Below are positions 759 to 64,000 of a stretch of DNA of 64,000 bases, piece by piece. The DNA is from Haliotis rubra. Taxonomy: Eukaryota. Positions within the stretch are counted from its first letter, which is position 1; each line of letters begins with the position of its first letter. The notes under the pieces were generated by a model, which saw only the letters and a program-made list of their open reading frames with translations, was not told the origin of the DNA and made no database searches. The stretch covers positions 3,472,001 through 3,536,000 of the forward strand of contig NW_025766780.1 of assembly GCF_003918875.1 (NCBI RefSeq). Direction: 5' to 3'. The position numbers were made by a program, and so were the translations under genes.

Positions 759-3700
759 ATGTGTCCGTTATTCTTCATTTTGTCCTTATTACAATGTAAG
801 TGATCCTTTCTTCATCTTGCTATTCACAGTGGACCGAGGTAAACAATATCCACTCTTCTGTCAGTTTGGGTAACAGGTTACACTTGAATATAAAAAAAAC
901 AAACAAAAACTGAATCTGTCGAAACAGCTGTTGACCGTTAGCCAAAAGTTTACGTCGCCATGAAACACATTTACCACTGTACAAGGATCAGTCATCGGGG
1001 GTCTGCTCGCAGAAATGACCGACGGATTGAACTACAGGACTACTGACTATTTTATAATTATAATTTTAACTGGCCAGTCTCATCCATGTTAAACACATCC
1101 TTTGCATTATATCCAGCTACAATTTCTGCAGCTTTTTGTCTGTCATCGACAATCAAAGTCCTGCAGCCAGTGTAATTTTGCAGTATAACCAGAGGATATT
1201 ACTTTTGTTCCGAAAACCATTGGCAAATGGCATTATTTCCTGTTTGGCATTATCACCAGGGTATTAAAAGGGCCATAAATCAGTTCTGGCAAAAATATGG
1301 CACTTTATCCAGGGTGGCATTATAACCAGGGTGCACTGTATATAGAAAAATATATATTCCCTTCAATATCAGCATTGATGCAAAGCGTCAAAACCCTTTT
1401 TGTAAGGTTTTGACACTTTTTGTAAACACGGAGTCAATTTATTCCCGACTCTATACGTATTAGTGCAAAAGGATAAAACCCCTCATATGTCCCTCTCATA
1501 TATTGTTGTAAAGGAAAGCAAAAAACCCACAAAAAGCAAAAATGAGCACACGCACGCACGCACGCACGCACACAAACACTACCACCACCCAAAATGAAAA
1601 TTCCAACAGAAAACAAAAGAACAAAGAAGACAATCTCATAAGCAAACGCATGTCTTGTTAAACACAACCAACTGTATGTTTCCTTGGGCGGTGGGGTAGC
1701 CTTGTGGTTAAAGCGTTGGTTCGTCACGCCGAAGACCCGGGTTCGAATCCCCACATGGGTACAATGTGTGAAGCCCATTTCTGGTGTCCCCCGCCGTGAT
1801 GTTGCTGGAATATTGCTGGAATATTGCTAAAAGCGGCGTAAAACCAAACTCAGTCAGTCGGTCAGTATGTTTCCACACAAACGGAATTGCGGAATACTGT
1901 TATGATCGTCTTTGTTTTACAGGCTTGTATCTTCTGCACGGACTGAACCATTCAGCCTGCTACAACTCCGAGTTCATCATTGACTCCCCACTGTGTGAAA
2001 GTACTGGGTATCTTGCCCCGAAGAAGTTTTTGTTTGGTCAAATCTCCCCCAGTAGTACATGTCGTACAGAACTCAGAGGACAACGAGACTATCATATTGT
2101 CCGAAGGTGTTGCAAAGTCCACAATGGAGACACCATACTCAAGGAAGTGTGTATTCCAGGACAGAAGGCGCTGTTGTCAAGTCCCCTGTCTCAGATGGCA
2201 AGCTACTGTAGTCGTGGACATCGCTGTGATTCCGGAAAGCGGTTGACCAGCACGGAACTATTTACTGGAGACTATGTTTCCTTGGAATTTGACTGTGTAC
2301 ATGGCGAGTAGCGATTACACTATTTCGTATACAGCGTCTATTTATCTATGCTATGGTACAAACTGAATGTAGAAATGTCAGTTAGTTTCTTTGGAACAAT
2401 ATGCCACCCCTTTGAGTTTCATGTGATTTCACTACGTTGTATCCGTCACACATCAAGCTTATTCGTGAAGATTCAGGTTAGGAATTAACTTCAGCAACTC
2501 ATACCATTCCGCTGACATGGGACATATGTAATAATTGTAATTAACAGTAAAAACCCCCAACAAATTCTAGACAAAGTACTTCACTGAGTCGATTCCCATC
2601 CTGGATGTGTGAGACACCATAGCGCCAAGACGAAAAGACAGCAATGAAAATAACTAAGCCGCAGAGGCTGGAGTTACAAATCACTTATCTTGTGTACACC
2701 TCTGACGTGTGTAAATTCAAATTCAAACCTTCCCTCCCCCCCCTACACACCCCTCCCCAAACCCCCAAAACACAACACTGCGAATGCAAAACACGTTTTT
2801 AAGGGCAGGTAGGATTAGATTATTTCTGTGTTGTTGCTGGAATATAGCTGTTATGTCACATTGATCTGAAGATGATATTTTTCACTATTATCCTCTTCCT
2901 CGAGTTTTTATTTATTCTGTTCTTTTTTTTAAGCAAAAGATGAAATCCATGTAAATTCCGATGAGGTGCTTTATGGGAAGAATGTTTATTTGATAAGCGA
3001 CAAGAAGGATGGAAGTGTACGCAATGCTAATTGTGCTGCCTACAGTAACAACCCGCAGTCTTCCATCGTCATCGCTCTTGTCGACAACCGTGTCCTCTCG
3101 GGAACTTGTACACTTTCATTCGGAAGTTCAATGTCTGGGACTTCAACCATAAATTGTGCCAAAACTGAGATTGTGAATGGTTGTAATAACGTTCTGTATA
3201 CCACCAGCAGCAGCAGGGTAGATATAAATCTAACGATGAACGTTCTTGCTAACAACAGTGATCGTCAGTTTCTGTGGATGATGGCTTCAGGTACGCACTA
3301 TTAACTCTGGATTATAATATATTACCAAATGAATAGTTTTTCGGTCACGTGTCAAACAAGTTTCAGTATTTATATTCACAACTTTAACTAGTAAATGTTA
3401 CACTTACGACATGACTACGAAAGAATTACAAATGAATCTAGGTTTTTCCTCAACTTCAATTTTAAAAGTAAGACCGAAGCATGATACAGTATATATGTCT
3501 TTGTAGTTTCTGATGGCAGTAAGCTGACTGTTGCCTGTGGGAAGACGATACCACCAGATGGAGCTTCTTCTACACAGTCGACTAAAAGCCGCCTGTCGAT
3601 TCATACGAGTTCACACAATTACATGACCAGTTCTTACTCAAAAGCAACATCACATTATCCCAGGGCTACCAGGACAACAGACATATGGACATCGTCGACA

Positions 3701-6700
3701 GGGTCGATGACCACAACAGCAACTGGGTTATTTGGGTCAGTTTCAAGCAAAGGGTATGAAGAAAGCACGCTAATGCATTTGAACTCTGATTCATCTTCTG
3801 GATTACAATTCACCACGTCTTCCTCGTTATTACTCACAACATTAAGGTCGACTACTGGTTGCAGGCACAACAGTCCCATTGCCGCCCACGAAAAGATCGT
3901 CTTCACTTCCACAAACGTATCCATCTTCACCGTCTATGACAGGAACACTATCGCCGCCACTGACACACTCGACCACAGGAGGAATACATTCTGCAGGACA
4001 TACATCATTCTCGACACGCCCAAGTCAAAGGTTGTCTTCGTCCTTGTTTGAAGCATCATTATCTTCAAGCGTCACACCATTTCATCTCATGAAGACAACA
4101 AAACAAACTTCACATCCAGTGACGGTGTCATCCTCACGACAGTCTGCAAGGAGTTCACCTTCATCATCAACATCAAGGGTTCAGACAGTTCCGCCTTCAA
4201 ACGTGCCATCACCCCAAACAAACAGAACATCTTCACATCAAGCATCAGGATCAATGCTGGCAACCTCCAATACTACGTCTTCTGAATCACACACTACAAC
4301 TGGGACAACTTACAACAGTCGGACTTCAAGGTCAACCACAGTGCCTATCACCTCTACAGCTACTTGGCTTACGACTTCAAAATCAACGCACGGTTCAAGA
4401 CGAAGCACACAAATTCAATTGAGCAAAACCAACTCCATGTCTGATTCACCTTCTGCATTAAAATACACCACGTCTTCCTCACCATTACTCACAACGTTAG
4501 GTCGAATACTGGTTGCAAGTACAACAGCTTCTTTGCCATCCACGAAAAGGTCATCTTCACTTCCACAAATGTATCCGTCTTCCCCTTCTATGACAGGAAC
4601 ATTATCGCCGCCACGCACACACTCGACCACAGGAGGGATACATTCTGGAAGACACACGTCATACTCGACACGTCCACCTCAAAGGTTGTCGTCGTCCGTG
4701 TTGGAGACATCATCGTCTTCAAGTGTCACACCATCTCTTTTCATGAAGACAACAAAATCAAATTCACATCCAGTGATGGTGTCAGTCGCGGAAAGTCCTG
4801 TACCTACACCTACATCAACGAGCGGAGGACCGAAGTCTTCAGACTTCATGTCATTCTCATCACATCCTGCAAGAAGTTCACCTTCATCATCAACATCAAG
4901 GGTTCAGACAGTTCCGCCTTCAAACGTGCCATCGCCCCAAACAAACAGAACATCTTCATATACATCATCAGGACCAATGCTGGCAACTTCCAATACTATA
5001 TCTTCTGAATCACATACTACAACTGGGACAACTTACAGCAGTTGGATTTCAAGGACAACCACAGTGCCTATCACCTCTATAGCTACTTGGCTTACGACTT
5101 CAAAATCAACGCACGGTTCACGTCGAAGCACACAAGTTCAATTGAGCAAAACCAACTCCATGTCTGATTCATCTTCTGGATTACAATTCACCACGTCTTC
5201 CTCACCATTACTCACAACGCTAGGTCGGATGCAGACAAGTACAGAAACTTCCTTGCCATCGACAAAAAGGTCATCTTCACTTCCACAAACGTATCAGCCA
5301 TCACCTTCTATGACAGGAACATTATCGCCGCCACTGACACACTCGACCACAGGAGGAATACATTCTGCAGGACACACGTCATACTTGGCACGCTCAAGTC
5401 AAAGGTTGTCTTCGTCCTTGTTTGAAGCATCATCATCTTCAAGCGTCACACCATTTCATCTCATGAAGACAACAAAATCAACTTCACATCCAGTGACGGT
5501 GTCATTCTCGCAAGGTACTGTACCTACACCTTCATCACCTACATCAACAAGCGGAGGACCGAAGTCTTCAGCCTTCATGTCATTCTCACCACAGTCTACA
5601 AGAAATTCACCTTCATCATCAACATCAATGGTGCGGAGTGTTCCACCTTCAAACGTGCCATCGCCCCAAACAAACAGAACATCTTCATATAAATCATCAG
5701 GACCAATGCTGGCAACTTCCAATACTATATCTTCTGAATCACATACTACAACTGGGACAACTTACAGCAGTCGGATTTCAAGGACAACCACAGTGCCTAT
5801 CACCTCTACAGCTACTTCGCTAACGACTTCAAAATCAACGCACGGTTCACGTCGAAGCACACAAGTTCAATTGAGCAAAACCAACTCCATGTCTGATTCA
5901 TCTTCTGGATTACAATTCACCACGTCTTCCTCACCATTACTCACAACGCTAGGTCGAATACTGGTTGCAAGTACAACAGTCTTCTTTGCCATCCACGAAA
6001 GGTCATCTTCACTTCCACAAACGTATCAGCTTCATCCCTTCTATGACAGGAACATTATCGCCGCCACTGACACACTCGACCACAGGAGGAATACATTCTA
6101 CAGGACACACATCATACTCGACACGCCCAAGTCAAAGGTTGTCTTCGTCCTTGTTTGAAGCATCATCATCTTCAAGCGTCACACCATTTCATCTCATGAA
6201 GACAACAAAACAAACTTCACATCCAGTGACGGTGTCATTCTCGCAAGGTACTGTACCTACACCTTCATCACCTACATCAACAAGCGGAGGACCGAAGTCT
6301 TCAGCCTTCATGTCATTCTCACCACAGTCTACAAGAAGTTCACCTTCATCATCAACATCAATGAAGCAGACAGTTCCGCCTTCAAACGTAACTTCGTTCC
6401 GTACAAACAGAATCAAGGACAACCACAGTGCCTATCACCTCTACAGCTACTTGGCTAACGACTTCAAAATCAACGCACGGTTCACGTCGAAGCACTCAAG
6501 TTCAATTGAGCAAAACCAACTCCATGTCTGATTCATCTTCTGGATTACAATTCACCACGTCTTCCTCACCATTACTCACAACGCTAGGTCGGATGCAGAC
6601 AAGTACAGAAACTTCTTTGCCATCCACGAAAAGGTCATCTTCACTTCCACAAACGTATCAGCCATCACCTTCTATGACAGGAACGTTATCGCCGCCACTG

Positions 6701-9700
6701 ACACACTCGACCACAGGAGGAATACATTCTGCAAGACACACGTCATACTCGGCACGCCCAAGTCAAAGGTTGTCTTCGTCCTTGTTTGAAGCATCATCAT
6801 CTTCAAGCGTCACACCATTTCATCTCATGAAGACAACAAAATCAACTTCACATCCAGTGACAGTGTCATTCTCGCAAGGTACTGTACCTACACCTTCATC
6901 ACCTACATCAACGAGCCGAGGACCGAAGTCTTCAGCCTTCATGTCATTCTCACCACAGTCTACAAGAAGTTCACCTTCATCATCAACATCAAGGGTTCAG
7001 ACAGTTCCGCCTTCAAACGTGCCATCGCCCCGAACAAACAGAACATCTTCAAATAAATCATCAGGACCAATGCTGGCAACTTCCAATACTACATCTTCTG
7101 AATCACATACTACAACTGGGACAACTTACAGCAGTCGGATTTCAAGGATAACCACAGTGCCTATCACCTCTACAGCTACTTGGCTAACGACTTCAAAATC
7201 AACGCACGGTTCACGTCGAAGCACTCAAGTTCAATTGAGCAAAACCAACTACATGTCTGATTCATCTTCTGGATTACAATTCACCACGTCTTCCTCACCA
7301 TTACTCACAACGCTAGGTCGGATGCAGACAAGTACAGAAACTTCTTTGCCATCCACGAAAAGGTCATCTTCACTTCCACAAACGTATCAGCCATCACCTT
7401 CTATGACAGGAACGTTATCGCCGCCACTGACACACTCGACCACAGGAGGAATACATTCTGCAAGACACACGTCATACTCGGCACGCCCAAGTCAAAGGTT
7501 GTCTTCGTCCTTGTTTGAAGCATCATCATCTTCAAGCGTCACACCATTTCATCTCATGAAGACAACAAAATCAACTTCACATCCAGTGACAGTGTCATTC
7601 TCGCAAGGTACTGTACCTACACCTTCATCACCTACATCAACGAGCCGAGGACCGAAGTCTTCAGCCTTCATGTCATTCTCACCACAGTCTACAAGAAGTT
7701 CACCTTCATCATCAACATCAAGGGTTCAAACAGTTCCGCCTTCAAACGTGCCATCGCCCCGAACAAACAGAACATCTTCATATAAATCATCAGGACCAAT
7801 GCTGGCAACTTCCAATACTACATCTTCTGAATCACATACTACAACTGGGACAACTTACAGCAGTCGGATTTCAAGGATAACCACAGTGCCTATCACCTCT
7901 ACAGCTACTTGGCTAACGACTTCAAAATCAACGCACGGTTCACGTCGAAGCACACAAGTTCACTTGAGCAAAACCAACTCCATGTCTGATTCATCTTCTG
8001 GATTAAAATACACCATGTCTTCCTCACCATTACTCACAACGTTAGGTCGAATACTGGTTGCAAGTACAACAGCTTCTTTGCCATCCACGAAAAGGTCATC
8101 TTCACTTCCACAAATGTATCCGTCTTCCCCTTCTATGACAGGAACATTATCGCCGCCACGCACACACTGGACCACAGGTGGGATACATTCTGCAAGACAC
8201 ACATCATACTCGACACGTCCACCTCAAAGGTCGTCTTCGTCCTTGTTTGAAGCATCATCATCTTCAAGCGTCACACCATTTCATCTCATGAAGACAACAA
8301 AACAAACTTCACATCCAGTGACAGTGTCACCCTCGCAAGGTACTGTACCTACACCTTCATCACCTACATCAACGAGCGGAGGACCGAAGTCTTCAGCCTT
8401 CCTGTCATTATCACCACAGTCTACAAGAAGTTCACCTTCATCATTAACATCAATGAAGAGGACAGTTCCACCTTCAAACGTAACATCGTTCCGTACAAAC
8501 AGAAGCGGTGTAACCACACTTAGTATCACTCCATCTGCTGCTGAACAGTCTACCGGAACACCTGGAACACCAGTGAACAAGTTTTCAATGTACTTTCCCA
8601 CAGTTTCCAGACAAGCACCTGTTGAAGAATCAACATTTAACACAGGTAGCAAAATTAGGATAAAACTCAACGGATTTGACTAAGATTGTGTATCAAATGC
8701 TGCTCTTATGTAACACTTTATAGAAAATGTAATACAAGAATATGACATTGGACGATTTTAACCTTTGTGGGAAAACCACTCGTGTATTATTAATATTTAC
8801 CATGGTTATATGGTTCTGAGATAATAGATTCTTATCGACTTACTTAAAACGTGCCATTAATCAACACATGTTTTATCAGTGCCATTATTATGTGTTTACC
8901 TGGAAAGCTTTGTCCATTTATTATAATAAATGTCGTCCTAACCCTACCATAAAGATCATGCGCAAAACACATAACAGAAATAGGAACAAAGATAGTAAAT
9001 ATCTTTTTATTTCCTTCCAGGTAAATCAGGCAACGACGATGACAAGATTGCGTTTAGTAAGTACCCTTGCCAAAGTAGGATTGGATGTTTACGTTGCATG
9101 TGTTGACGTGTTCAGTGCATGGGAGCTGTATGTCAATTCCCTCTGTTTCAGTACTCGAGGTGATCACAAGTCTGACGGGAGCAACGCTTCTCATACTGAT
9201 GGTGATCACAACAGCTATGTGTTTGTGTTTCAAGAAGAGGTACTGTATATGTGTATATAGGTCTTGTAAAAGAGTGTATGTAGCTCATAGTCAGATCGCC
9301 GATCCCCATTTTGATTGAGACTGCAATATCAATTTACAAAATGTGTGTAGGTCCATTTCATTTTACCTGGGTAAATTCAGTTTCAACAGCATTCAGAATG
9401 ACTATGTATGTATGGTAACTTCACTAACGTTTGAATATATTCACCTTTGCTATTCATATTGGTACCTCCACGTATGGTAATCAGAAAATGCCTTTTTAAA
9501 AGTGGTCAAATGTAACATGATATGTTTGGGATTACACCTCCTCAGTAAAGTACGGATTCTAGTACTTTTTGGGGTCGAGTCCCGTCCGATAATCGAATCC
9601 CAGAGTGAGGCACCTAATCGCCAACACGCAAAATCAGTGACGTAATCATGCTGAAATCATATCTAGTACGCATATATAATAGTTTTATATATATATTAAA

Positions 9701-9994
9701 AACCCATGTAACTTTCAGTATTAATTGATTTGGTTTATGTACGTTTACACTTCAAATATGAGCGGCCGATGTGACTATACATTTTAACTCACTCAAATAT
9801 GAGCATTAATTACGAGGGTTCACTAATTTGGGGTCAATATCAACGTCTTGTGTTGTTGCAGGATGAACGAGTTGAAACGGAATTCTCGTCATCGGAATAA
9901 ACTGTCAGAGACCATGGCTTCAAATCTGGAATTAAAGAGACGCTCCGTTGTATCTTTAGAATCTGGATATTGTTCCAATTCAATATCATCTTGA
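759..9994 (+). CDS. Paralog 1: type I membrane protein (signal peptide, SUEL-like, CUB-like, giant mucin repeat stalk, TM, short tail); frameshifts in stalk exon as assembled
   Basis: Manual splicing with consistent phases. Exons: 759-795 (MCPLFFILSLLQ), 1923-2303, 2934-3290, 3507-8645, 9021-9056, 9152-9239 (TM ILEVITSLTGATLLILMVITTAMCLCF), 9862-9994 (stop TGA 9992-9994). All acceptors are AG; donors are GT except a GC at 2304. Confidence 0.8.
1686..1864 (+). mobile_element. tRNA-derived SINE (family A)
   Basis: A box TAGCCTTGTGG, B box GGTTCGAATCC, tail GCTGGAATATTGC..(CAGT)n; TSD gtatgtttcc at 1674-1683 and 1865-1874. Confidence 0.85.
1923..2303 (+). CDS. Paralog 1 exon: Cys-rich SUEL/Gal_lectin-like domain
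   Basis: ACY..PLC..STC..RRCC..EVC..YCSRGHRC..DYVSLEFDC; Cys spacing matches the other four paralogs. Confidence 0.75.
2934..3290 (+). CDS. Paralog 1 exon: CUB-like domain
   Basis: VYLIS..NC..TC.L.F..INC..YT..VDINL..FLWM pattern; phase 1-1 exon. Confidence 0.7.
3507..8645 (+). CDS. Paralog 1 giant mucin-like exon of about 6.5 tandem ~729-nt (243-aa) Ser/Thr/Pro repeats
   Basis: ORFs 3623, 3879, 5965 and 6428 are pieces of one exon. The anchor atgtctgattca recurs at about 4437, 5160, 5889, 6524, 7253 and 7982. Frameshifts at about 3845, 5980-6035 and 6412. Confidence 0.8.
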
Positions 9995-10564
9995 TATGGC
10001 TAATTCAGCACAGTGCATATGACAGTTTTCTTGCTTCCCGCATGTACAAACAGCTTTTACGGTGTGGACGATGTATGCTGAATGAATGCGAAACAGAAAT
10101 ACACGCAGTCTTTGTGGACATGGTTGCCTTAAGAGTGAGAAAACGTGAAGATATCACCCGATTAATATCATTAAACAGTGTACTGATAACACATATTTTG
10201 ACACCAGGTGTAATTTTTCACAACAGTTGGTCATTGGAACAGTGGCGCCAGCAGCGTCTGCCATCTGTAGTTGGCAGTGTCTACTCAACACATAACCGGG
10301 TAGGCACAACTAATATTTGCAAACCAACAGACATGCATAGACAATACCCAGTTGTCGCAGCTGCCTGTCATAAGACTCACTGACATTTGCATCGTCGTAG
10401 TGCAAGCAGCGTTACATATACAACACAACATGCCCAAAGATCATCACAATATTCCTTGACGTGTCTACTTACGACTATGAACTGTTTTGTATATGGGAGT
10501 AGCGGCCCTTGGACCAAGAGGACTGGGATTGGAAACGTCAGCCCCGTGTCTGCTGATACACATG

Positions 10565-12291: not shown

Positions 12292-12402
12292 TGGGCCCCG
12301 TTTCACAAAATGATCGTAGTGCTACGACTGCCGTAAGTCTATGTTAAAGTATGGAAGTTACGATCACCTTAGCGCTACGATCGCTTTGTGAAACGGGGCC
12401 CA
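12292..12402. mobile_element. Palindromic MITE
   Basis: 18-bp TIR tgggccccgtttcacaaa / tttgtgaaacggggccca; a partial related copy lies at about 24851-24926. Confidence 0.75.
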
Positions 12403-13165: not shown

Positions 13166-13170
13166 CCTCA

Positions 13171-46100: not shown

Positions 46101-46613
46101 CCATTACAAGGAGCAGTACCTTCACGAGGACTACTGAACACCTTGAACACCGAGAGTCTGATACAGCCTCTTGGACATAGCAGTCAAACTATTTCTTCAG
46201 CATCTGCATCTACATTTACCCCACGAACAGGAACACTGCCGACATTAAGAATCCTACGAGATACACCTCCCAATATCAACCCTGATACAGAATGTTTATC
46301 TCAGCAAGTTGAAGAGCTGGGGATGTATGCAGATGTAACACCACTCGATTCGAGCCGTGTAATGGAAGAAGAGGCTGCGAAGAAAAAGACGAAGAAGAGG
46401 AAAAAGAGGAAACTTAAGAAAAGTAGAAGCGAGAACATATTAAAGAATAAAACAATAGCGGAAACTTCACCTGTGTCGCATCGTCCATCTGGTGAGAATG
46501 TTCTAGATCATGTTGACTCACTGGACAATACAACCGGGCAAAAGAAAACGAAAAGAAAACACAAGAAACGTAAACAAGAAGAGGAAACATCTGCGCCGGT
46601 TGATCCTGTCTAG
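40188..46613 (+). CDS. Paralog 3: type I membrane protein (signal, SUEL-like, CUB-like, acidic S/T stalk, TM, Pro/Lys-rich tail); two frameshifts as assembled
   Basis: Exons: 40188-40260 (MSYTLLFIVFFVQFAWQESTGRAE), 40925-41309, 41873-42205, 42572-43459, 44707-44792 (TM AILGGVFGSIIGVIIVLGFIF), 45901-46613. Frameshifts at about 41007 and in the T5 run at about 46005-46009. Confidence 0.75.
40925..41309 (+). CDS. Paralog 3 exon: SUEL/Gal_lectin-like domain
   Basis: SGCYGN..EC..TACP..QDCC..GAC..SCTGYRRC..PTC..SNYMIANFYC. Confidence 0.75.
41427..41669 (+). mobile_element. SINE family B
   Basis: Full-length copy in a paralog 3 intron. Confidence 0.85.
41873..42205 (+). CDS. Paralog 3 exon: CUB-like domain
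   Basis: LYLAHTTYP..HTCYI..IQIMAIDLHL.C..LSD..LSC..IYTS..RFWLHIQ. Confidence 0.75.
42572..43459 (+). CDS. Paralog 3 exon: S/T/D-rich stalk
   Basis: Begins ASSPNSSVTVTCG, the start conserved among paralogs; ORF 42592; donor at 43460. Confidence 0.75.
43848..44063 (-). mobile_element. SINE family B
   Basis: Reverse copy. Confidence 0.8.
45250..45493 (+). mobile_element. SINE family B
   Basis: Copy with a duplicated head hairpin (gcttgccacaaaaggcgact and gcttgtcgtaagagg). Confidence 0.85.
45901..46613 (+). CDS. Paralog 3 terminal exon: cytoplasmic tail with LPPL and poly-Lys blocks
   Basis: Acceptor ctgcag at 45900. ORF 46008-46613 is reached only after a 1-nt correction in the T run. Confidence 0.62.
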
Positions 46614-48678: not shown

Positions 48679-51600
48679 ATGCATACCCTAATGTGCCAAT
48701 ATGCATTATGGTTTTCCATATTATTTCTACCACAACATGCAGCTAAAACTGGTAAGTGTACGAAAATCAACTTAATATTAAATCTGTTTTTGATATATCC
48801 CATGTAAAATTGAAATATAACGTTCTTGGCATATTTTTGAGATTTTATAATCTTAAACTTATGAATGCATGATCTAAAAATTTTGTTTCCAGCAGGATTA
48901 TCGGTTCCGGCTCAAGTCAGTACAGGTTGCCATGGGAACACACATGGTGATTTTCTTATCCCTGCATGTGCAAACCAGACTATCATTGCAGTGGCTGGTG
49001 TTTATGCTATGGTGAAGAAGGAAGACACCGGGTGTCCTGAGGCTGCAACAGAAACAAACAGGGATGAAGCAAAGTGTTGTACCTACGACTCCAGAGACTG
49101 TAAGCTGTTGTATCTGGCTTCAGAAATGTCCTTCTATGAAGATTGCACGGGAGTTTACACGTGCAAGATGAAGGTAGCTACACAGCTGACCCAGGGTTGT
49201 AACGATGTTGGATACTTCTTAAGATCCAACTACATGATGATGGAATATCTCTGTATACCAAGTACGTACCATCTTAACCTCTTCTTACTTTTAATATTCA
49301 ATATGTCTTCGTCATTACGGAGGTAGAACTTCGTAGAAGATTTCTACATTTAAACTCAAATGGTGGTCCTGTGCATAGGGCTCAGGTCACAATTCAGTTG
49401 AAGTTAAGCAGCATTGAGCTCAGAGAGTCCTTTTGGGGTGGGTAACCGTGTTTGGCAGCTTGACTCCTGAGAGTCTCCAGTACTTCAGTCCTGCCCCACA
49501 ACGAAACACATGTGATACATGTGGTCTCACCTTAGGCAAGTTAGTTTGTTCAAAATTGCCTCTGTTCATCCAGCAGAGAATGGGTACCCGGTGGGATAAG
49601 TCATGTGACTATAACCTTAAGCTTCTAGCGCCTAAAAGGCAGCTTGGGTTAACAGGGGTAATAATGTTGTGATGTTTGTGCGCGCTTTGAGCACGCCCTT
49701 TTGTGGTGTAGAGTATTGCGCGGTATAAGTACCCTCAGTTATATTATCATCATCATGGTGTGTACGCGTGCTTCGCGACAAGCGTGACTGTGTTAATTTG
49801 ATGTAACTCAGTTTATTATTCCAACTCCACCATGATCTGTCAGCCTTATAGGTATAGGTTTTTCGTGTTCAATTAAAACACGACTGAAGTCTTTGAAGGG
49901 GATTTAGTCAGGTTGAAGAAAAAACGACATGAAAAACGGTAGCTTATCACAGGATTTCCTACGTCTGAAAACGAGGCACATTGAGTCCCTAGTAACTCAT
50001 ATCGCATAGATGAAATAAAAGATACCCTGTCTGTACACCAGCCTGAATGTTGCCTGCAAGGTTGATTGTGGTACTGGTTAACTGTATGTACATGTGATAG
50101 TTACACGGACGGCTCGTCTCGTGCAATCCAGATGCGCTATCAGTTTAAGATTGGACAATCCGGGTCAGCGCACGTCAGGGTTTAATGACGGGAAGATAAA
50201 TAGAGAAAGATCGCCCGTTATGGTCAACCAAAATATATAATTATGCAAAAATGGTCATTTTAAAGAGCTCAATGTGATCTCCCCTCGTTCTAGGAGTGAC
50301 TNNNNNNNNNNNNNNNNNNNNNNNNNNNNNNNNNNNNNNNNNNNNNNNNNNNNNNNNNNNNNNNNNNNNNNNNNNNNNNNNNNNNNNNNNNNNNNNNNNN
50401 NNNNNNNNNNNNNNNNNNNNNNNNNNNNNNATATATATGTTTGTCCGTTGTTTAACGCCGCACTCAGCAATATTCCAGCTATATGACGCCGGTCTGTAAA
50501 TAATCGAGTTTGGGCCATGCAATCCAGGGGTTGACATAACGAGTATCTATCTGGGATAAGATGACATGTGTCAACCAAGTCAACAAGCCTGAACATAATA
50601 ACCACCCTTACGACTGTAACGATGGGTTACTGACGACCAGTTCTAACCCGGATCTTCACGAGTACCAACGTATATTATCACATAATCAATGGTATGAAAC
50701 TTAGTTACTATACCCGGACATGCTGAAACAGTATGACACGCGTAATCGTGTATTTGTACTATTTGGCAACATGGTCATACGTTTTAAACTAATTTAAGGC
50801 TTATCTTGGTTTTAAAAGGATAAAAACGAGGTCCGAGTTCGAGTTCAATTGATGTCAATTGATGTCAACTCTGTTCTGATTTCTAGTTAAGGTTCATTAA
50901 CCACTTTCGTTTTGTGTCGACATAGACAACACGTGTACTCATCTTCTCTGTTGATATCAAATTATATAAAATGATATCATATTTGGTAGGATCTCTGACG
51001 TTGGAGGGAGTGGAAGATGCAAGTGTCTCCGGCACGTCGGTGTATCTCAAAAGCAAGGATTATCCTGCTGGTATCCCAGCTGGTACTGAGGTAAGCTGTT
51101 CCGTAGCCGCATCCTGTCGCCATCACCGCAATCCACGTGGATCTTGGATCTTCAGAACGATAGCAGTGGATCGTGTCAGCAGCGTCTCAACATTAAAGAC
51201 AACGATGAAGAAATGCAAATAGATTGCGGCAGCAACAACGGGGACACCTTTAAGATAACTGAGGCCTTCAAGAGCAAATCTCATTTTCTGGTGATCACCT
51301 TCTTGAATAACAACAGTGGAAATACTGGACGCTACTGGCTTGAAATAAAGTGTATGTTGTGTTATTATCTTTGTGTGTGTTGAGTAGAAGTGAGGTTAGT
51401 TTTGTATAGGTATTGTTTCAGACATATAGCGATCCCTTTCAAATATCAGAGTACACGGGTTTGTTTCGCTCCAAAGTTCGACGCAGTCAACACATTGCCG
51501 GTTTTGTCCGAAACTAATTAGAATTTATTAATATTTTGGTAGTCGTATATCAGTTTTGTTTTTACATTACATATAGAATGCATAAACATTATTAGTTACG

Positions 51601-53150
51601 AAAGTACATCAGATATAATACCTAACATGCTTATTCTGAAGAAAGTATACTCCGCGGAATAGGTGGTCATTTCCTTTCTGACATTGCTTTCACTACAAAG
51701 TGGATTTTCAATAATATTTCCATTATAATTTACATGAAGACGTATGGCTACAGTTGGTAATTTAAATTACTTCGTTCCATACTTTCATTTCAGCTGAAGC
51801 AAATGGTGCAACTGTGGAAATGACGTGTGGAAATGACGCAGCATCTACCCCTCCAACTGTTGACAAGTGTACAGATAACAGTACTGATCATTCTAAAGGG
51901 CCTGCTACTGTCACAGAGGATCCCGTCATGTCAGAATTAAGTAAGAACTAGATTCATAGCTCATTTTCTACTACGAAGAGAAGGTGGTTGATGTGTTTTC
52001 TCCTGGGAAGAAATGCCCATATTATTTGACAGTTATAGAATTCTGGAACTGTAAACTCAATACAATTATTTTATTAGATGCCTTCTAGTCTTGTGGTCAT
52101 ATTCTATCAGCCAGTTCATCAATTGATTCAGAACGTGAGATTAGTAGGTGCTATGCATGTACATTTCATACCAAAGGCAACACACACATTAACATGGACA
52201 TTTATCTTCAATTTGTTTCAAACATTTTAAATAATTATTCTTCTAATTTCAGACAAATATAAGTATGCTACGATTGGTCTAGGTGTTGCCGTAGCTATGT
52301 TCGTCACTGTCATAGTGTGTGGGTTCCTCGTCAAATGTCTGAAGGCCTTAAAGCAGTCTAATAAGGTAAGGCAATTCAGCATCAGGCCTTTGAAGTCAAC
52401 ATAATTATGTTTTTGATGTCTCATATAATTTTCAAAGATCTTCAAGACCATCTCAAACCGTACCCTCTATTTCAAATATGTGGGGGGCGGTAGGGTAGCC
52501 TAGTGGTTAACGCGTTCGTTCGTCACGCCGAAGGCCCGGGTTCGATTCTCCACATGGGTAAAATTTGTGAAGCCCATTTCTGGTGTCCCCCGCAGTGATA
52601 TTGCTGGAATGTTGCTAAAAACGGCGTAAAACCATACTCAGTCAGTCAGTCAGTCAAATATGTGAACTGAAAACGGAAGTAAATGGATAACATGATTGCT
52701 ACCACACTCATTATTTTATTGAGGTAAGTAGCAACTTTAACTTAAACTTAAACACCTGGCCATTTGTGCTACTGCCATGTATCTCCGTGATGTCAGCTTC
52801 ACAGCAATCATTTACCCAATACGGCAGCCTGTTTTCAACAAACAAATTATTCCATTATCATTTCTGCACACATATGGCCAATGATATGTAAGGAACGTAG
52901 CACCTGTAGCACCTGTATCTAATTACTCTTTCTTCTATAAATATATCCTAATTGGTATCACTTTCCCTTTTCACTCACAGCAATACGATATACCTGTCCA
53001 AATATGTAACTGGTATAGTCACGATGTATACTTGCAAACGTGGTGAAAGAATTGCTTTCATTTATTGTAAACCGTACTGATTTTCAGACAAAAGTCAAGC
53101 CCATCACCAAGAGATCCGATGGGTTTGGTGACCAGCAGGTAAAAAGTTAA
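48679..53150 (+). CDS. Paralog 4: type I membrane protein (signal, SUEL-like, CUB-like, short stalk, TM, very short tail); disrupted CUB exon, possible pseudogene
   Basis: Exons: 48679-48751 (in-frame ATGs also at 48625 and 48691), 48893/48896-49261, 50990-51351, 51794-51940, 52253-52365 (TM YATIGLGVAVAMFVTVIVCGFLV), 53088-53150. Confidence 0.75.
48893..49261 (+). CDS. Paralog 4 exon: SUEL/Gal_lectin-like domain
   Basis: TGCHGN..PAC..TGCP..AKCC..RDC..DCTGVYTC..QGC..SNYMMMEYLC; intact frame; NAGNAG acceptor. Confidence 0.8.
49435..49755 (+). mobile_element. SINE with core/Deu-like domain and L2-type tail
   Basis: ccttaggcaagttagttt..catccagcagagaatgggtacc..gcgctttgagc..gcgcggtataagt..(atc)n. 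Confidence 0.55.
50437..50662 (-). mobile_element. SINE family B
   Basis: Reverse copy. Confidence 0.8.
50990..51351 (+). CDS. Paralog 4 exon: CUB-like domain (frame disrupted)
   Basis: VYLKSKDYP..VSCSV (ORF 50971) joined to DLQND..SCQQRLNIKD..IDC..RYWLEIK (ORF 51144). Confidence 0.7.
52483..52653 (+). mobile_element. tRNA-derived SINE (family A)
   Basis: Full copy; 11-bp TSD tcaaatatgtg at 52472 and 52654. Confidence 0.85.
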
Positions 53151-60263: not shown

Positions 60264-63200
60264 ATGCTGGTCGTTGTGATTGCGATTCTTTTGTGCTTAC
60301 AGAATTTGCGTAAGTACATGGGTTTAATTCTTACCTTCCNNNNNNNNNNNNNNNNNNNNNNNNNNNNNNNNNNNNNNNNNNNNNNNNNNNNNNNNNNNNN
60401 NNNNNNNNNNNNNNNNNNNNNNNNNNNNNNNNNNNNNNNNNNNNNNNNNNNNNNNNNNNNNNNNNNNGCTATTTCCAGATTGCATTCCATGGCCTCTGCA
60501 GACAGCCACCGGGTGTTTTGGAAACACCTTTGATGACTTCCTTACTCCTTCTTGCAATACTTCACATGTTATGGCTATCAGTGGGGTGTTTGCAATGGTC
60601 AAAGAACGGACAACAAATTGTCCAGAAGAAGCGGAGTCCAGTAACAGAGATGAGGAGAAGTGCTGTCGTGTAGCACCAGAGGACTGTAAAATGGTCTGCA
60701 CGGTCTCGGACATGCCATATTATTCAGAATGCAGTGGGTTGGAGACTTGCGTGTCTAACGTTGCTAAAGCTGTCACCACATGCAATGATACCAACTTTCT
60801 TGACACATCAAATTATATGCTGATGGAATTCTACTGTATCACAAGTATGTCAAGCATGCATTCCTTATTCTGTTATAATACTTGTTTTCATGCATATGTA
60901 TTAACAAAGCGCCATTCTGTATATACGCACGGTGTATATAAGCGTAATAGAATATAATACATTGCATGTGTTTAGGATTACACCTTGTCAGAAAATATAT
61001 AACATATCTTACATTTGACCACTTTCTAAATGACATTGTCGATTCATTAAACATATTCCCCCTATTTCTTTAGGTATCCGGGCAAAATATCTGTTACGAT
61101 AAGAATACATAACATATGATACGAGAAAGAAATGTAAATATATTTTCTTATACATCTATTCATTTATATACACGCATCAAGGTCTTCTTTTCTGACTCTG
61201 AATGAGGTTATATGTGCCCTGACCAGTAGATCCGTGTGCATTCAAGTTACCATTCACAATTCCCTAGGGACTATATACAACACATGCTGCTGGGACACTA
61301 GATGTTTTACTTCCATATATCTTATATCCTGATGGATGGACAAGTCAAGAAATATCACGCTAGTCTAGAATGATGTGGCAAGTCTGTATCGCCTCAGCTA
61401 CTGAAAGTTGGCATTGTATTTTATTTGTTGGCAGATATATATTATTAAATGAGACAGACTTACTCCTGGGACTAGATGTTAATGTAGGTGAACAGAGGCT
61501 TTATTGAACTAACTTTCTTGCCTCGGATGAGACCACGGTTTTCATGTGAATGTACTGATTCGGTTTTCACCGACACTTCATATCCGTCAGATTACGTACT
61601 GGGCCTAGTTATTGTAAAGAAAATTATTGGTGAAGAAATATCACTATCGGGTTACGATCTTAGGGGCAGGAGCTTTAGAAGACCAAAGAGGACGTAGTGA
61701 CAACTATCTTCCTGAAGGTTAAGAGCATCTTAGGATATCTTCTGATGAACAAACGCAGTTAATCATCAAATATTAGTGGCTTACTTTCGTTCGAATTTAA
61801 CTATTGATTGACTTGTTTAATATCATTTCTCGCCAGGGTCCCTCATCCTCAATGCAAGCAGCACTGAAGCAGGTACAACGAGAGGGACCGCTGTGTATGT
61901 ACAAAATCAAGGTTACCCTAAGTCGTCAGAAATAGGAGGGTCTTGCAGTGTTTCCTCCTCCTGCAATACAACAATAGTATTGAGTGTCATACACCTCAAC
62001 CTTAACAACAGCTCCAACGCATGTAATCAACATGTGAACATCACTGATGGAAGCGACAATCTCAGCATTAACTGTTCCCATAACAACCATGGAGATCACT
62101 TTCCTATTACAGATGTCTACACAAGCATCGGCTATTTCCTTGTGCTGGATTTTACTACTGTCGTGACTGGCGCCAAGGGACAGTTGTGGATAGAAATTAG
62201 AGGTAATAGGTAGCGCAGGAGGTAAAAAAACGTCTGTTCAAAAATTCGAAATACTTTTGAAATAGAAGTTTGACGTTCAAAGCCTGTAATATACCCTCGG
62301 ACACAGAGCACGTTGGGATTAAATTGCATGAGTATCATAGCAAAACCATTTATCAGTGTCTTTATCAATGTTAATATTATTAACTGCAAACGTTTACAAC
62401 GTTCAGCTGACGGCCCCAATACGCTTCCTTTCGTAAGGTTCAAATCCATATTCGACCATGGACCTTCGATGTGGATCGTCAGCAATTTCTGAACCTTTGG
62501 CTGTTGACGAATGCCCCGTTAACACAACAACAACAACAACAACAACAACAGCGTCCACGACAACACCATTATCACACATGGTGTCGGAAAGGACGTCTAC
62601 CATCCTCAGAAACACTTCACGTTAGCATTGATTGGGTTGGATATATATAGTTATTTAATTGTCAAACACCAATACATGCATGCTCTACATTACCAGCAGT
62701 TAATATGTAAGTCATATATCTAATTGATATGTGCTGTATTCGGAACTTAACTTTAAACCTCGTACTGATGAACTTCCTCAGGAGTGTAACTTCATTTCAT
62801 TGACGTATTTGGAAACTAAACAGCAAGGAACAATGTCATTTGTCAAATTAAACCAATATGTTGTGAGATATGACGGGTATTAATTCTCAGTATATAGGGA
62901 TAGGTTTTGAAGTATCAGCAGATACGCAAAAATGAATATATCATTGTATACAAGTAGCTCAGATTAAAGAAAGGCAACTTTTGAGGAAATCAGCTTCACT
63001 TTGGTCCAGTTTCATTGATTTCACATAAATATGTATTCCCCTTTACTTTCAGAAAACTGGATAAACGTATTGATTGTCGTTGGGATACTCTTAACCATGA
63101 TGATTGTGTTTTCGGGAATACTTGAATGTAGATCTCGGAGACAGAAGAGAGCGAACAAGGTATTATTCCATGTCTTGATGTACCATTTGTATCACATTGT

Positions 63201-64000
63201 TCCAGTGTACTATTCATGAGTTTCAGAGTTTGAATGCTTATTGCGTAGGTATGACCATAGTTTTCTTCTTAGTCTTAACATACCACGTTGTGAACCCTTT
63301 AACTCACTCCTTGCGGACAAAGGTCGGTGGTCATAAAGTTTCTTAATGCTTGTTCACATGGGTTGGTCACCTCTCAGTGACCCCGCCTTCATGGTCCGTT
63401 GTTCTCAGCATTAGCCATATTTAGTTTTCGGAGCAATATCAATTGCACAATACATTACGTCGTGGAATGTTTTTTTCCAAGTTGCATTATTAGTGTGTTA
63501 TTTCATAAGGTAAAATTGATAGTGAATCACCCTGACAACTTGGCATGTTGTACAGGTACATCCATCCGGTAACACACAGGCCAGCGACCATCATGGACTG
63601 CCTCTCTATGCTTTTGGCCCGAAACCGGAGACAATTACACAGATAGCGCCAACCCGAGGAATACTGTCTCCGCAACAGTCATCAAGACAAACCGTACATA
63701 AACGCACCTCCTCAAGTGACTCTGTTCCACCGGAACTGAGGAAGTTCGGCGATACCAAATTGCAGACTATACCGAGTGCTGGTCAGACACTTCCTCCAGT
63801 CAGGTCTCCACAGCCTCCTCGGTCAGTAGACGTGCCCACATTATCTTCACAATCTCCAACTGTGTCAGCATCTGCAGGAGCGCTAAATGGTCACGTTGGC
63901 AACAACATCGTTGTGGAAGATGCGGGCCAGAGTGAATACATGCAGACAGAGAGGAACAGGAAAAAAAAGAAGAGAAAGAAAGACAAAACGAGTGAAGATG
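60264..64000 (+). CDS. Paralog 5: type I membrane protein (signal, SUEL-like, CUB-like, Thr stalk, TM, Pro/Lys-rich tail), runs off window end; 31-nt insertion in stalk exon
   Basis: Exons: 60264-60309 (MLVVVIAILLCLQNL), 60479-60844, 61837-62202, 62407-62620, 63053-63159 (TM WINVLIVVGILLTMMIVFSGIL), 63556 to beyond 64000 (open frame VHPSGNT...RKKKKRKKDKTSED). Confidence 0.78.
60479..60844 (+). CDS. Paralog 5 exon: SUEL/Gal_lectin-like domain
   Basis: TGCFGN..PSC..TNCP..EKCC..EDC..ECSGLETC..TTC..SNYMLMEFYC. Confidence 0.8.
61837..62202 (+). CDS. Paralog 5 exon: CUB-like domain
   Basis: VYVQNQGYP..SCSV..IVLSVIHLNL..AC..V.ITD..INC..VYTS..QLWIEIR. Confidence 0.78.

What the first reader, a model, noticed from the sequence alone, without database searches (positions are those of the whole stretch)
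759..64000. Hidden tandem array of a SUEL-like + CUB-like + mucin-stalk single-pass receptor family
Seen in sequence: five co-oriented genes share the exon order signal, ~125-aa Cys domain, ~115-aa beta-rich domain, stalk beginning with a conserved (V/L)x(V/M/L/A)xC(G), TM, tail. All ectodomain introns are phase 1, yet the paralogs are very divergent apart from the Cys/Trp/Tyr framework. Established knowledge: the Cys spacing (C..C..C..C..CxGxxxC..C..YxxxxYxC) is that of the SUEL/Gal_lectin fold, and LxSxxYP..C.C.V..I.L..C..L.I.D..C..W is CUB-like. Inference: a lineage-expanded, fast-diversifying family of surface receptors for glycan or ligand recognition (immune, gamete or larval-settlement sensing). 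I do not recognise it as a named family.
Basis: partly seen in the sequence, partly recalled or inferred. Interest (0 to 1): 0.9.

Follow-up and report, generated by a model that had tools for sequence, protein, structure and literature searches.

The report
Abalone SUEL–CUB mucin-stalk receptor gene array
The window holds five neighbouring, very divergent copies of an unstudied mollusc gene family for cell-surface proteins that carry a lectin-like plus CUB "head" on a sugar-coated stalk; the family is real and widespread, but it is already present, unnamed, in public protein sets, and four of the five copies are frame-broken in this assembly.

Summary
There are exactly five SUEL-like and five CUB-like exons, all on the + strand. 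They form five genes with the same plan: signal exon, Cys-rich exon, beta-rich exon, Ser/Thr stalk, TM exon, tail. Every ectodomain intron is phase 1.

The domain calls are right. A high-confidence model of the g4 orthologue's head (pLDDT 94) gives a CUB fold (Z 13.5) and an RBL/SUEL fold (Z 7.1-7.6). The SUEL domain is atypical: it has ten conserved Cys and lacks the YGR/DPC/KYL sugar motifs.

The family is pan-molluscan, with 146 clusters. It is annotated only as "uncharacterized", "mucin-like" or "SUEL/CUB domain-containing". I found no paper on it.

"Fast-diversifying" is not supported. Orthologue dN/dS is 0.14-0.42, and the five copies are old paralogues.

As assembled, g1-g4 carry frame breaks. 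At g3, DNA reads of the same species restore the frame.

No RNA evidence could be obtained, and function is inferred only. The scan noted a similar cluster on another piece of this genome (s1-339701).

The parts
759..795 (+). g1 exon 1, signal peptide (MCPLFFILSLLQ + 1 nt), GTAAGT donor, phase 1
   Evidence: Matches the N-terminus of the H. asinina orthologue P0006.
1923..2303 (+). g1 exon 2, SUEL-like domain. GC donor, phase 1 at both ends.
   Evidence: 90% aa identity to P0006.
2934..3290 (+). g1 exon 3, CUB domain
   Evidence: 88% aa identity to P0006.
3507..8645 (+). g1 exon 4, stalk. It starts with the KLTVACG strand, then a ~729-nt tandem Ser/Thr/Pro mucin repeat (44% S+T). The reading frame changes at ~3844, ~5998 and 6392-6413.
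9021..9056 (+). g1 exon 5, 36-nt mini-exon (KSGNDDDKIAF), phase 1 to phase 1
9152..9239 (+). g1 exon 6, transmembrane segment (LEVITSLTGATLLILMVITTAMCLCFKK), ends in phase 2
9862..9991 (+). g1 exon 7, short cytoplasmic tail (42 aa) and stop
15081..15144 (+). g2 exon 1, signal peptide
   Evidence: Same 21-aa length as the H. cracherodii P0008 exon 1.
16396..16799 (+). g2 exon 2, SUEL-like domain. One base is missing at ~16674-16676 relative to the orthologue, so the frame shifts f2 to f1. GTAAGT donor.
17799..18141 (+). g2 exon 3, CUB domain. It runs into the assembly gap 18142-18393, so its last ~5 codons and donor are not readable.
18472..18696 (+). g2 exon 4, Thr/Pro-rich stalk (54% S+T), starts with the DMTVTC strand
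19521..19599 (+). g2 exon 5, probable TM exon (SSALGGIVFTAICWCMYSMW), phase 1 to phase 2, GTAAGT donor
   Evidence: Inferred from splice phase and hydrophobicity only.
19982..20537 (+). g2 exon 6, cytoplasmic tail that starts with the polybasic HKKAKKAKALRRRK
   Evidence: No Pfam family.
40188..40260 (+). g3 exon 1, signal peptide
40925..41309 (+). g3 exon 2, SUEL-like domain. The window is 2 nt short at 41008, so the frame shifts f0 to f1. Two DNA runs of the same species carry CG there, which restores the frame.
41873..42205 (+). g3 exon 3, CUB domain
42572..43459 (+). g3 exon 4, 296-aa acidic Ser/Thr-rich stalk that starts with the SVTVTCG strand. The 3' end is the best donor found (CAG|GTAACG).
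44680..44792 (+). g3 exon 5, TM exon, phase 1 to phase 0, ends ...NK|GTAAGT
46023..46613 (+). g3 tail exon (acceptor uncertain: 46023, 46047 or 46053). Two Lys/Arg clusters; ends ...APVDPV.
48679..48751 (+). g4 exon 1, signal peptide (MHTLMCQYALW...)
48896..49261 (+). g4 exon 2, SUEL-like domain, intact
50990..51351 (+). g4 exon 3, CUB domain, broken by an 11-nt deletion after 51116 and a 7-nt tandem duplication at 51148-51154 (net -4 nt)
51794..51940 (+). g4 exon 4, short stalk (TVEMTCG...)
52253..52365 (+). g4 exon 5, TM exon, 113 nt as in g3, ends ...NK|GTAAGG. The tail exons of the H. rufescens orthologue have no match in the window.
60264..60309 (+). g5 exon 1, signal peptide. It is separated from exon 2 by the gap 60340-60467.
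60479..60844 (+). g5 exon 2, SUEL-like domain
61837..62202 (+). g5 exon 3, CUB domain (the only window exon with a direct, weak Pfam CUB hit, E=0.058)
62483..62620 (+). g5 exon 4, short Thr-rich stalk
63053..63159 (+). g5 exon 5, TM exon, ends ...NK|GT. Exons 1-5 splice into one open frame.
63556..64000 (+). g5 tail exon (acceptor uncertain), open to the end of the window, with a Lys/Arg cluster

Best explanation
The window is from an abalone-like (Haliotis) genome. It holds a tandem array of five old paralogues of a pan-molluscan family of type-I membrane glycoproteins.

Shown:
- Each gene encodes a signal peptide, a rigid two-domain head, an O-glycosylation-type Ser/Thr stalk of very different length (45 to ~1,700 aa), one TM helix, and a non-conserved, partly polybasic tail without a known domain.
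- The head is a divergent ten-Cys SUEL/RBL-fold domain packed against a CUB domain.
- Orthologues in other Haliotis species are under purifying selection.

Inferred:
- The stalk holds the SUEL-CUB head above the cell coat, where it binds an extracellular ligand.
- The ligand is more likely a protein than rhamnose or galactose, because the RBL sugar-binding motifs are replaced throughout the family.
- The proteins therefore act as adhesion or co-receptor molecules. Comparable cases are the latrophilin and EVA-1 SUEL domains and the neuropilin and CDCP1 CUB domains.
- g1, with its huge mucin array and 42-aa tail, is closer to a membrane-tethered mucin.

In this assembly four copies are frame-broken:
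- At g3 this is an allele or assembly difference.
- At g4 the 11-nt deletion and 7-nt duplication look like real inactivating mutations.
For: Architecture and splice phases.

Exactly five copies, all on +.

Fold:
- AF2 model of P0002:25-271 (the H. rufescens orthologue of g4, 75-85% identical) has pLDDT 94.1 and pTM 0.89.
- CUB matches reach Z 13.5, rmsd 2.5 A over 111 residues.
- Almost every solved-structure match to residues 6-124 in the Foldseek-independent search is an RBL/SUEL domain: ADGRL3 8djg_E Z 7.6, latrophilin-3 6vhh_B 7.5, SUL-I 5h4s_A 7.3, CSL3 2zx0_A 7.1. The one exception is PfRIPR 8cdd_A, Z 6.6.

Sequence:
- The family profile against PDB sequences gives only three hits: two latrophilin RBL domains (E 0.022, 0.094) and the neuropilin-2 CUB (E 0.15). 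Each spans its whole domain.
- SUEL_Lectin and CUB are the two Pfam families hit by most members (5 and 3 of 53, best E 4.4e-5 and 8.7e-4).
- Atlas features agree.

Family range: 146 clusters. All 30 looked up that carry a source name are molluscs, covering chiton, limpets, abalone, Biomphalaria and many bivalves.

About 43 members show SUEL+CUB, then an S/T-rich region, then a TM.

Constraint: dN/dS is 0.14-0.42.

Expression of a family member: a 708-aa uninterrupted ORF sits on ~5.03-kb contigs from four independent runs.

Sugar motifs: YGR/DPC/KYL become AGA/xxC/NYM, and the Glu after the first Cys becomes Tyr. The motif definition is from PMC10817417.
Against: - No transcript evidence for these five genes. 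The runs found were all DNA.
- No ligand, tissue or phenotype is known.
- Pfam does not recognise the window's own SUEL exons at all, and recognises only one CUB exon weakly.
- RBL structural Z-scores (7.1-7.6) are in the range the tool calls middling.
- Four of five copies are not open reading frames as assembled.
- g3 compared with a ~2-5% diverged relative shows 12 nonsynonymous to 4 synonymous changes, which is compatible with neutral drift.
- Tails are unrelated between paralogues, which argues against one shared signalling mechanism.
Confidence: 0.6

Rival explanations
1. These are membrane-tethered or shed mucins with a mainly structural role (mucus, barrier, lubrication, epithelial coat). 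The SUEL-CUB head serves only to cross-link or anchor, and there is no signalling.
For: - g1 has ~1,600 aa of 729-nt tandem Ser/Thr/Pro repeats (44% S+T) and a 42-aa tail.
- Sources name relatives 'mucin-17-like', 'mucin-2', 'integumentary mucin C.1-like' and 'serine-rich adhesin for platelets-like'.
- The H. cracherodii g2-like model ends after the stalk without a TM.
- Tails are not conserved between paralogues.
Against: - g4 and g5 stalks are only ~45 aa, and g3's is acidic rather than mucin-like.
- g2, g3 and g5 have tails of at least 158-214 aa.
- The conserved part of the family is the head, not the stalk.
- No SEA or VWD module typical of membrane or gel mucins was found.
Confidence: 0.2
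2. These are carbohydrate-recognising pattern-recognition receptors: a membrane-bound rhamnose/galactose-type lectin with immune function.
For: - The domain has the SUEL/RBL fold.
- RBLs in bivalves and fish bind bacterial LPS (PMC10817417).
- The genes sit in tandem arrays with copy-number differences between species.
Against: - The YGR, DPC and KYL motifs that define RBL carbohydrate-recognition domains are absent family-wide. The equivalent Arg, Asp and Lys positions are Ala, variable and Asn.
- dN/dS gives no sign of an arms race.
- A different sugar site cannot be excluded.
Confidence: 0.12
3. In this genome the array is largely a set of decaying pseudogenes. Only g5, and perhaps g3 in some haplotypes, is functional.
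For: - There are frame breaks in g1 (three), g2 (one), g3 (one) and g4 (two).
- The g4 lesions are an 11-nt deletion and a 7-nt tandem duplication, which are not typical homopolymer errors.
- g4 tail exons were not found.
- g3 N:S is 12:4 against a close relative.
Against: - At g3 two independent DNA runs of the same species carry the intact frame.
- The g2 and g1 breaks sit in short homopolymers or at a repeat-register jump, as assembly errors do.
- Long-term dN/dS of 0.14-0.42 shows that any decay is recent.
- Orthologues in three other Haliotis genomes are intact models.
Confidence: 0.25
4. These are gamete-recognition or larval-settlement receptors evolving under positive selection, by analogy with abalone lysin/VERL.
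For: - Stem branches to g1 and g2 are very long (2.1-2.3 changes per site).
- CUB evolves faster than SUEL.
- CUB spermadhesins share the fold (1spp, 1sfp).
Against: - Gene-wide dN/dS is well below 1 in all four orthologue comparisons.
- The family is present across classes with very different reproduction.
- There are no expression data.
Confidence: 0.05

Closest known systems
SUEL/rhamnose-binding-lectin (RBL) domains of latrophilins (ADGRL1-3) and of EVA-1/EVA1C
   Same: - Same alpha/beta fold over the whole domain (Z 6.7-7.6 to 8djg, 6vhh, 6ska; EVA-1 and EVA1C are among the Swiss-Prot matches).
- N-terminal position on a membrane receptor.
- In latrophilin the domain is used for protein binding (teneurin complexes 6vhh, 6ska appear).
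   Different: - Ten conserved Cys, including an adjacent CC pair, instead of eight.
- The YGR/DPC/KYL motifs are lost.
- It is followed by a CUB domain and a mucin stalk, not olfactomedin/GAIN/7TM (latrophilin) or a second SUEL plus FAM176 tail (EVA-1).
- Below Pfam thresholds.
CUB-domain single-pass receptors and co-receptors (neuropilins, CDCP1, Kremen, NETO)
   Same: - CUB beta-sandwich at Z 11-13.5 and rmsd 2.2-2.9 A to MASP, C1s, neuropilin, Kremen and Neto2 CUBs.
- Type-I topology with a tail lacking a catalytic domain.
   Different: - A single CUB fused to a SUEL domain.
- Only three conserved Cys lie inside the domain. The fourth appears to be the conserved Cys at the start of the stalk exon (inference).
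- The Ca2+-site residues were not tested.
- No FA58C, MAM, Kringle, WSC or LDLa modules.
Membrane-tethered mucins
   Same: - Long tandem-repeat Ser/Thr/Pro stalk between a folded head and one TM helix (g1 44% S+T over ~1,600 aa; g2 54%; g5 47%).
- Repeat period and number differ between species (729 nt here against 564 nt in H. asinina).
   Different: - No SEA, EGF or VWD modules.
- In g3-g5 the stalk is short or acidic.
- The conserved element is the SUEL-CUB head.
Unnamed predicted proteins of other molluscs, e.g. H. asinina XP_067676264.1, H. rufescens LOC124112732 and 'serine-rich adhesin for platelets-like', H. cracherodii XP_071085388.1, Lottia V4B1G6, M. gigas K1QS15
   Same: - These are true orthologues and family members: 61-90% aa identity to g1, g2 and g4 with the same exon junctions.
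- Same domain order.
   Different: They are only computational annotations, and none is characterised. The window copies differ by frame breaks and by copy number: one g2 here against three head units in H. cracherodii, and g4+g5 here against two near-identical g4-like genes in H. rufescens.

Membership tests
SUEL/RBL lectin domain (Pfam PF02140) | Characteristic ~100-aa alpha/beta fold | tested here: met
   For model residues 6-124, the matches are RBL domains: 8djg_E Z 7.6 (89 of 98 residues), 6vhh_B 7.5, 5h4s_A 7.3, 2zx0_A 7.1, 6ska_D 6.7. The one other match to that range is PfRIPR 8cdd_A at Z 6.6. An Atlas SUEL cluster gives TM 0.62 and rmsd 2.7. The model is of the H. rufescens orthologue of g4.
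SUEL/RBL lectin domain (Pfam PF02140) | Sequence match above the Pfam gathering score | tested here: not met
   There was no PF02140 hit for any window exon at E<=10, nor for ten full-length relatives at E<=0.1. Five of 53 family heads hit it, best E 4.4e-5. The profile against PDB gives latrophilin RBL at E 0.022.
SUEL/RBL lectin domain (Pfam PF02140) | Eight conserved Cys forming four disulfides | tested here: inconclusive
   The family has ten near-invariant Cys (positions 13, 26, 48, 62, 63, 70, 85, 91, 103, 121 of the model). Which eight correspond to the canonical set was not resolved.
SUEL/RBL lectin domain (Pfam PF02140) | YGR, DPC and KYL carbohydrate-recognition motifs (PMC10817417) | tested here: not met
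   The aligned positions are A/G/A (never Arg), variable-variable-C, and N-Y-M. The residue after the first Cys is Tyr in 31 of 47 and never Glu.
SUEL/RBL lectin domain (Pfam PF02140) | Binding of L-rhamnose or D-galactose | not testable with these tools
   This needs a recombinant protein and a glycan assay.
CUB domain (Pfam PF00431) | Ten-strand beta-sandwich of ~110 aa | tested here: met
   Z 13.5, rmsd 2.5-2.6 A over 111-112 residues to MASP-1/3 CUB2. There are more than 20 further CUB structures at Z 10.5-13.3, covering model residues 129-247.
CUB domain (Pfam PF00431) | Sequence match above the Pfam gathering score | tested here: not met
   The only hit among the window exons is g5, E 0.058 and 14.2 bits against a cut-off of 21.4. 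Three of 53 family heads hit it, best E 8.7e-4. Atlas features score 0.93 to CUB clusters.
CUB domain (Pfam PF00431) | Four Cys forming two disulfides | tested here: inconclusive
   C160 and C187 are invariant. C204 is conserved without a conserved partner inside the domain. A conserved Cys follows in the first stalk strand (xVxVxCG) and was not in the model.
CUB domain (Pfam PF00431) | Ca2+-binding acidic site of the ligand-binding CUB subclass | not tested
   No tool-derived residue mapping was made. Only column frequencies were obtained (Q189 in 32 of 42, D195 in 38 of 47).
EVA-1/EVA1C | Two SUEL domains, a TM and a FAM176 cytoplasmic domain | tested here: not met
   There is one SUEL-like and one CUB domain per gene. 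No PF14851 was found in the tails.
Membrane-tethered mucins | Tandem-repeat Ser/Thr/Pro region plus a TM | tested here: met
   This is met for g1 and, more weakly, for g2 and g5. g3 and g4 stalks are short or acidic.
Membrane-tethered mucins | SEA (or VWD/EGF) module next to the membrane | tested here: not met
   No such Pfam family was found in the window pieces or in ten relatives.

The most novel reading that the evidence does not exclude
The rigid, sugar-motif-less SUEL-CUB head may define an unstudied class of protein-ligand surface receptors. It may be shared across spiralian phyla, not only molluscs.

- AlphaFold-DB clusters match the whole two-domain head at TM 0.64-0.86. By their accession series, which I recall from memory and did not check with a tool, some of these appear to be brachiopod, annelid and rotifer proteins.
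- Tandem arrays with species-specific head duplications would supply recognition diversity. An example is three 3.76-kb four-exon head units without intervening TM exons in H. cracherodii.
- The Lys/Arg clusters near the C-termini of g3 and g5 could act as nuclear-targeting signals after cleavage.
Probability: 0.15. Interest if true: 0.65.

Novelty: new variant of a known kind. Interest (0 to 1): 0.4.

Why it matters
Molluscs lack most vertebrate-type recognition receptors, and many of their expanded surface-protein families are unannotated.

This work defines one such family:
- It has a clear architecture: SUEL fold, CUB, stalk, TM.
- There is a confident head model.
- It is pan-molluscan, and its orthologues are under constraint.

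The work also shows that the SUEL domain here has lost the lectin motifs. That redirects experiments from glycan binding towards protein ligands.

For genome annotation, it shows that Pfam-based pipelines miss both domains. It also shows that this locus in the present assembly contains frame errors or null alleles that would break automated gene models.

It is not a new kind of biology. The components are known and the proteins already sit, unnamed, in public databases.

Tried and rejected
- **Direct Pfam on window exons.** Nothing for SUEL and one sub-threshold CUB hit. This is uninformative rather than negative.
- **AF2 on the five-paralogue alignment alone.** pLDDT was 49.9, unusable. I replaced it with a 53-row family alignment.
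- **RNA evidence.** Both run searches returned only DNA-like runs. The contigs cover introns evenly and show no splice joints at exon borders; the listed joints all fall in high-copy repeats. Junctions therefore rest on orthologue models, phase and consensus.
- **Looking up P0002's locus.** This failed because only the longest isoform is on record. P0151 worked.
- **A sixth copy or remnants between 20.6 and 40 kb or on the minus strand.** None was found. A weak tblastn hit at 23022-23069 was not confirmed.
- **Tail homology between paralogues, and g4 tail exons from H. rufescens.** No matches.
- **VxPx ciliary-motif idea (s1-344887).** The motif occurs twice each in the g3 and g5 tails and not at all in g1 or g2. 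It is too short and unconserved to carry weight.
- **Literature by accession and by domain words.** Nothing on this family.
- **Exact positions of the g1 mucin frame changes.** These are only partly resolved, because two repeat variants and a register jump at 6392-6413 confuse the alignment.
- **One piece of the g4 CUB dN/dS.** It was mis-framed. One search gives the corrected figure.

Full report
**What is in the window**

The sequence is eukaryotic, about 40% GC, with five N runs. Translation of open segments on the + strand shows two kinds of conserved exon, each recurring five times:
- a Cys-rich exon of about 120 codons;
- a beta-rich exon of about 115 codons.

The five pairs lie at about 1.9/2.9 kb, 16.4/17.8 kb, 40.9/41.9 kb, 48.9/51.0 kb and 60.5/61.9 kb. 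Pairwise identity is 14-47% for the first exon and 17-35% for the second.

I built profiles from 43 outside relatives plus the window rows and scanned all six frames. The scan finds exactly these five plus five, all on +, and nothing else. tblastn with the window's own pieces also finds no sixth copy.

**Gene models**

Each copy has, upstream, a short Met-hydrophobic exon ending in a phase-1 GT donor, four of the five with GTAAG. Phase-1 AG/GT sites bracket both domain exons and the stalk exon. TM exons were located by hydrophobicity and phase.

The models agree with orthologue proteins at the junctions:
- g1 against H. asinina XP_067676264.1. The signal exon, the SUEL|CUB and CUB|stalk junctions, a 36-nt mini-exon, the TM exon and the tail exon all correspond.
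- g2 against H. cracherodii XP_071085388.1.
- g4 against H. rufescens LOC124112732.

g1 intron 2 uses a GC donor that is conserved in H. asinina.

The TM exon gives two subgroups. In g1 and g2 it ends in phase 2. In g3, g4 and g5 it is 107-113 nt and ends in phase 0 after "..NK". So the claim that all ectodomain introns are phase 1 holds for every junction I could define.

**Gaps and frame breaks**

| Gap | Location | Consequence |
|---|---|---|
| 18142-18393 | 3' end of the g2 CUB exon | Last ~5 codons and donor unreadable; orthologue intron of ~200 nt is compatible with the estimated length; continuity unknowable |
| 50302-50430 | g4 intron 2 | None for coding |
| 60340-60467 | g5 intron 1, ending 11 nt before the acceptor | Signal exon linked to g5 by position only |
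| 27475-27608, 28172-28312 | Intergenic ACN microsatellite | None |

As assembled, only g5 splices into an open frame. The other four are broken:
- **g2** lacks one base at about 16674 relative to the orthologue.
- **g3** is two bases short at 41008. When DNA contigs of two runs of the same organism were laid on it, both carry "CG" there, giving ...TGT CCG AGT GGT... in frame. A ~2-5% diverged organism has a different two-base-short version.
- **g4** has an 11-nt deletion and a 7-nt tandem duplication in the CUB exon relative to H. rufescens, net -4 nt.
- **g1**'s mucin exon changes frame three times. At 6392-6413 it jumps in repeat register.

The g3 case shows that at least some breaks are allelic or assembly differences. 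The g4 lesions look like real mutations. I could not test the others because the single read-laying run was used on g3.

**What the domains are**

Pfam sees nothing in the Cys exons and one sub-threshold CUB hit. Language-model features point uniformly to SUEL_Lectin (0.95) and CUB (0.93).

A profile of the five Cys exons retrieved 146 representative clusters, 40 of them at E<=1e-10. I assembled a 53-row two-domain alignment from them. Three results came from it:
1. Against all PDB sequences its profile hits only latrophilin RBL domains (E 0.022 and 0.094, full domain) and the neuropilin-2 CUB (E 0.15, full domain).
2. Member-wise Pfam scanning puts SUEL_Lectin (5 members, best 4.4e-5) and CUB (3 members, best 8.7e-4) on top.
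3. AlphaFold2 on the H. rufescens orthologue of g4 gives pLDDT 94.1 and pTM 0.89, which indicates a fixed two-domain head.

Structure searches on that model:
- **CUB.** Foldseek and VIA-align match residues 129-247 to more than 20 CUB structures at Z 10.5-13.5, rmsd 2.2-3.0 A.
- **SUEL.** In the Foldseek-independent search, the matches to residues 6-124 are RBL/SUEL domains: ADGRL3, latrophilin-3, sea-urchin SUL-I, salmon CSL3 and latrophilin-1, at Z 6.7-7.6. One PfRIPR domain appears at Z 6.6.
- EVA-1 and EVA1C also appear in the Swiss-Prot search.

The SUEL domain is nonetheless atypical. It has ten near-invariant Cys, including an adjacent pair. The three motifs that define RBL carbohydrate-recognition domains (YGR, DPC, KYL; PMC10817417) align to A-G-A, x-x-C and N-Y-M, and the Glu after the first Cys is Tyr.

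In the CUB domain one conserved Cys (C204) has no conserved partner inside the domain. A conserved Cys sits in the first stalk strand (xVxVxCG). A disulfide between them is my inference, not a result.

**Family and evolution**

All 30 clusters I looked up that carry a source name are molluscan. They include:
- a chiton (Liolophura);
- limpets (Lottia, Patella);
- Haliotis (four species);
- Biomphalaria;
- many bivalves.

Source names are "uncharacterized", "mucin-17-like", "mucin-2" or "serine-rich adhesin for platelets-like". UniRef auto-names some "SUEL-type lectin domain-containing" or "CUB domain-containing".

About 43 members show SUEL+CUB followed by an S/T-rich region and a TM. AlphaFold-DB cluster models match the whole head at TM 0.64-0.86. 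The organisms are masked in that output.

A family member occurs as an uninterrupted 708-aa ORF on ~5.03-kb contigs from four independent runs, which reads as mRNA.

The window genes are nearest to H. asinina, with dS of 0.12-0.20. dS is about 0.5 to H. rufescens and H. cracherodii.

| Comparison | SUEL dN/dS | CUB dN/dS |
|---|---|---|
| g1 vs H. asinina | 0.28 | 0.30 |
| g2 vs H. cracherodii | 0.16 | 0.42 |
| g4 vs H. rufescens | 0.14 | 0.23 |

The g4 stalk gives 0.34. All of this indicates purifying selection. g3 against the close relative shows 12 nonsynonymous to 4 synonymous changes, which is near neutral, but the counts are small.

In a maximum-likelihood tree the five copies do not form one clade:
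- g1 and g2 sit with their Haliotis orthologues on very long stems.
- g3 pairs with a Lottia protein.
- g4 plus its orthologue is sister to g5.

So the array consists of old paralogues. Recent duplication is seen elsewhere. H. rufescens has two g4-like genes with dS of 0.05. H. cracherodii has three 3.76-kb units of the four-exon g2-like head.

**Function**

Nothing is known experimentally, and I found no paper on the family. Tails have no Pfam domain and are unrelated between paralogues. g2 has a juxtamembrane polybasic run, and g3 and g5 have Lys/Arg clusters near the C-terminus.

The best-supported reading is a set of type-I surface glycoproteins. They present a rigid, probably protein-binding SUEL-CUB head on a stalk of variable length, and act in adhesion or as co-receptors. 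g1 is closer to a tethered mucin. Rival readings and their odds are given separately: structural mucin, lectin pattern-recognition receptor, pseudogene array, gamete receptor.

**Verdict**

- The fold interpretation is right.
- The evolutionary and "hidden" parts are not supported.
- The family is uncharacterised but already present in public protein sets.
- The scan's own notes list a similar cluster on another piece of this genome (s1-339701), which I did not test.
- Interest is moderate.

Noticed in passing
window 53663-54642: A Tc1/mariner-type transposase lies between g4 and g5 (HTH_Tnp_Tc3_2 E 7e-10; DDE_3 split over two ORFs). A stop or frame change at ~54406 interrupts it.
   Followed up: partly
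window 41350-41750, 43750-44150, 45150-45550 (also 13303-13524, 15425-15641, 24339-24502): Interspersed repeats of very high copy number sit in g3's introns and elsewhere. Summed contig depth is in the millions in all four DNA runs, and the many 'joints' all fall between these repeats. Copies are also present in the H. asinina and H. cracherodii loci.
   Followed up: partly
L003 (H. cracherodii) 6247-16994: There are three tandem 3.76-kb units. Each holds only the signal, SUEL, CUB and stalk exons of the g2-like gene, with ~550 nt between units and no TM or tail exons in between. The RefSeq model ends by reading into the intron after the stalk. This could mean secreted isoforms, or head cassettes that share downstream exons.
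   Followed up: partly
L001 (H. rufescens) 10001-14397 and 20636-24397; 15620-17560: There are two near-identical tandem g4-like genes (SUEL dS 0.05). Between them is a minisatellite of ~58-nt period. One RefSeq model (252 aa) uses it as its C-terminal coding sequence.
   Followed up: no
window 2304 and L002 (H. asinina) equivalent: The intron after g1's SUEL exon has a GC (not GT) donor, conserved between the two species.
   Followed up: yes
window 3507-8645 versus L002 12390-16630: The mucin repeat unit is ~729 nt in the window but ~564 nt in H. asinina. Repeat period as well as copy number differ between species.
   Followed up: no
window 23100-24340 and 27400-28340: The first region is CA-rich low-complexity sequence, open in all three + frames, with strong GC skew. 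The second is ACN (Thr-codon-like) microsatellite flanking two of the assembly gaps. No family exon is nearby.
   Followed up: no
window 41104, 41120, 41127: One DNA run of the window's own species shares three substitutions in g3's SUEL exon with the diverged organism B, and carries the intact-frame CG. This suggests two old haplotypes at this exon.
   Followed up: no
window 34713-35048: A 112-aa ORF has an N-terminal TM-like segment and a charged coiled-coil-like tail. It has no Pfam match and its origin is unknown.
   Followed up: partly
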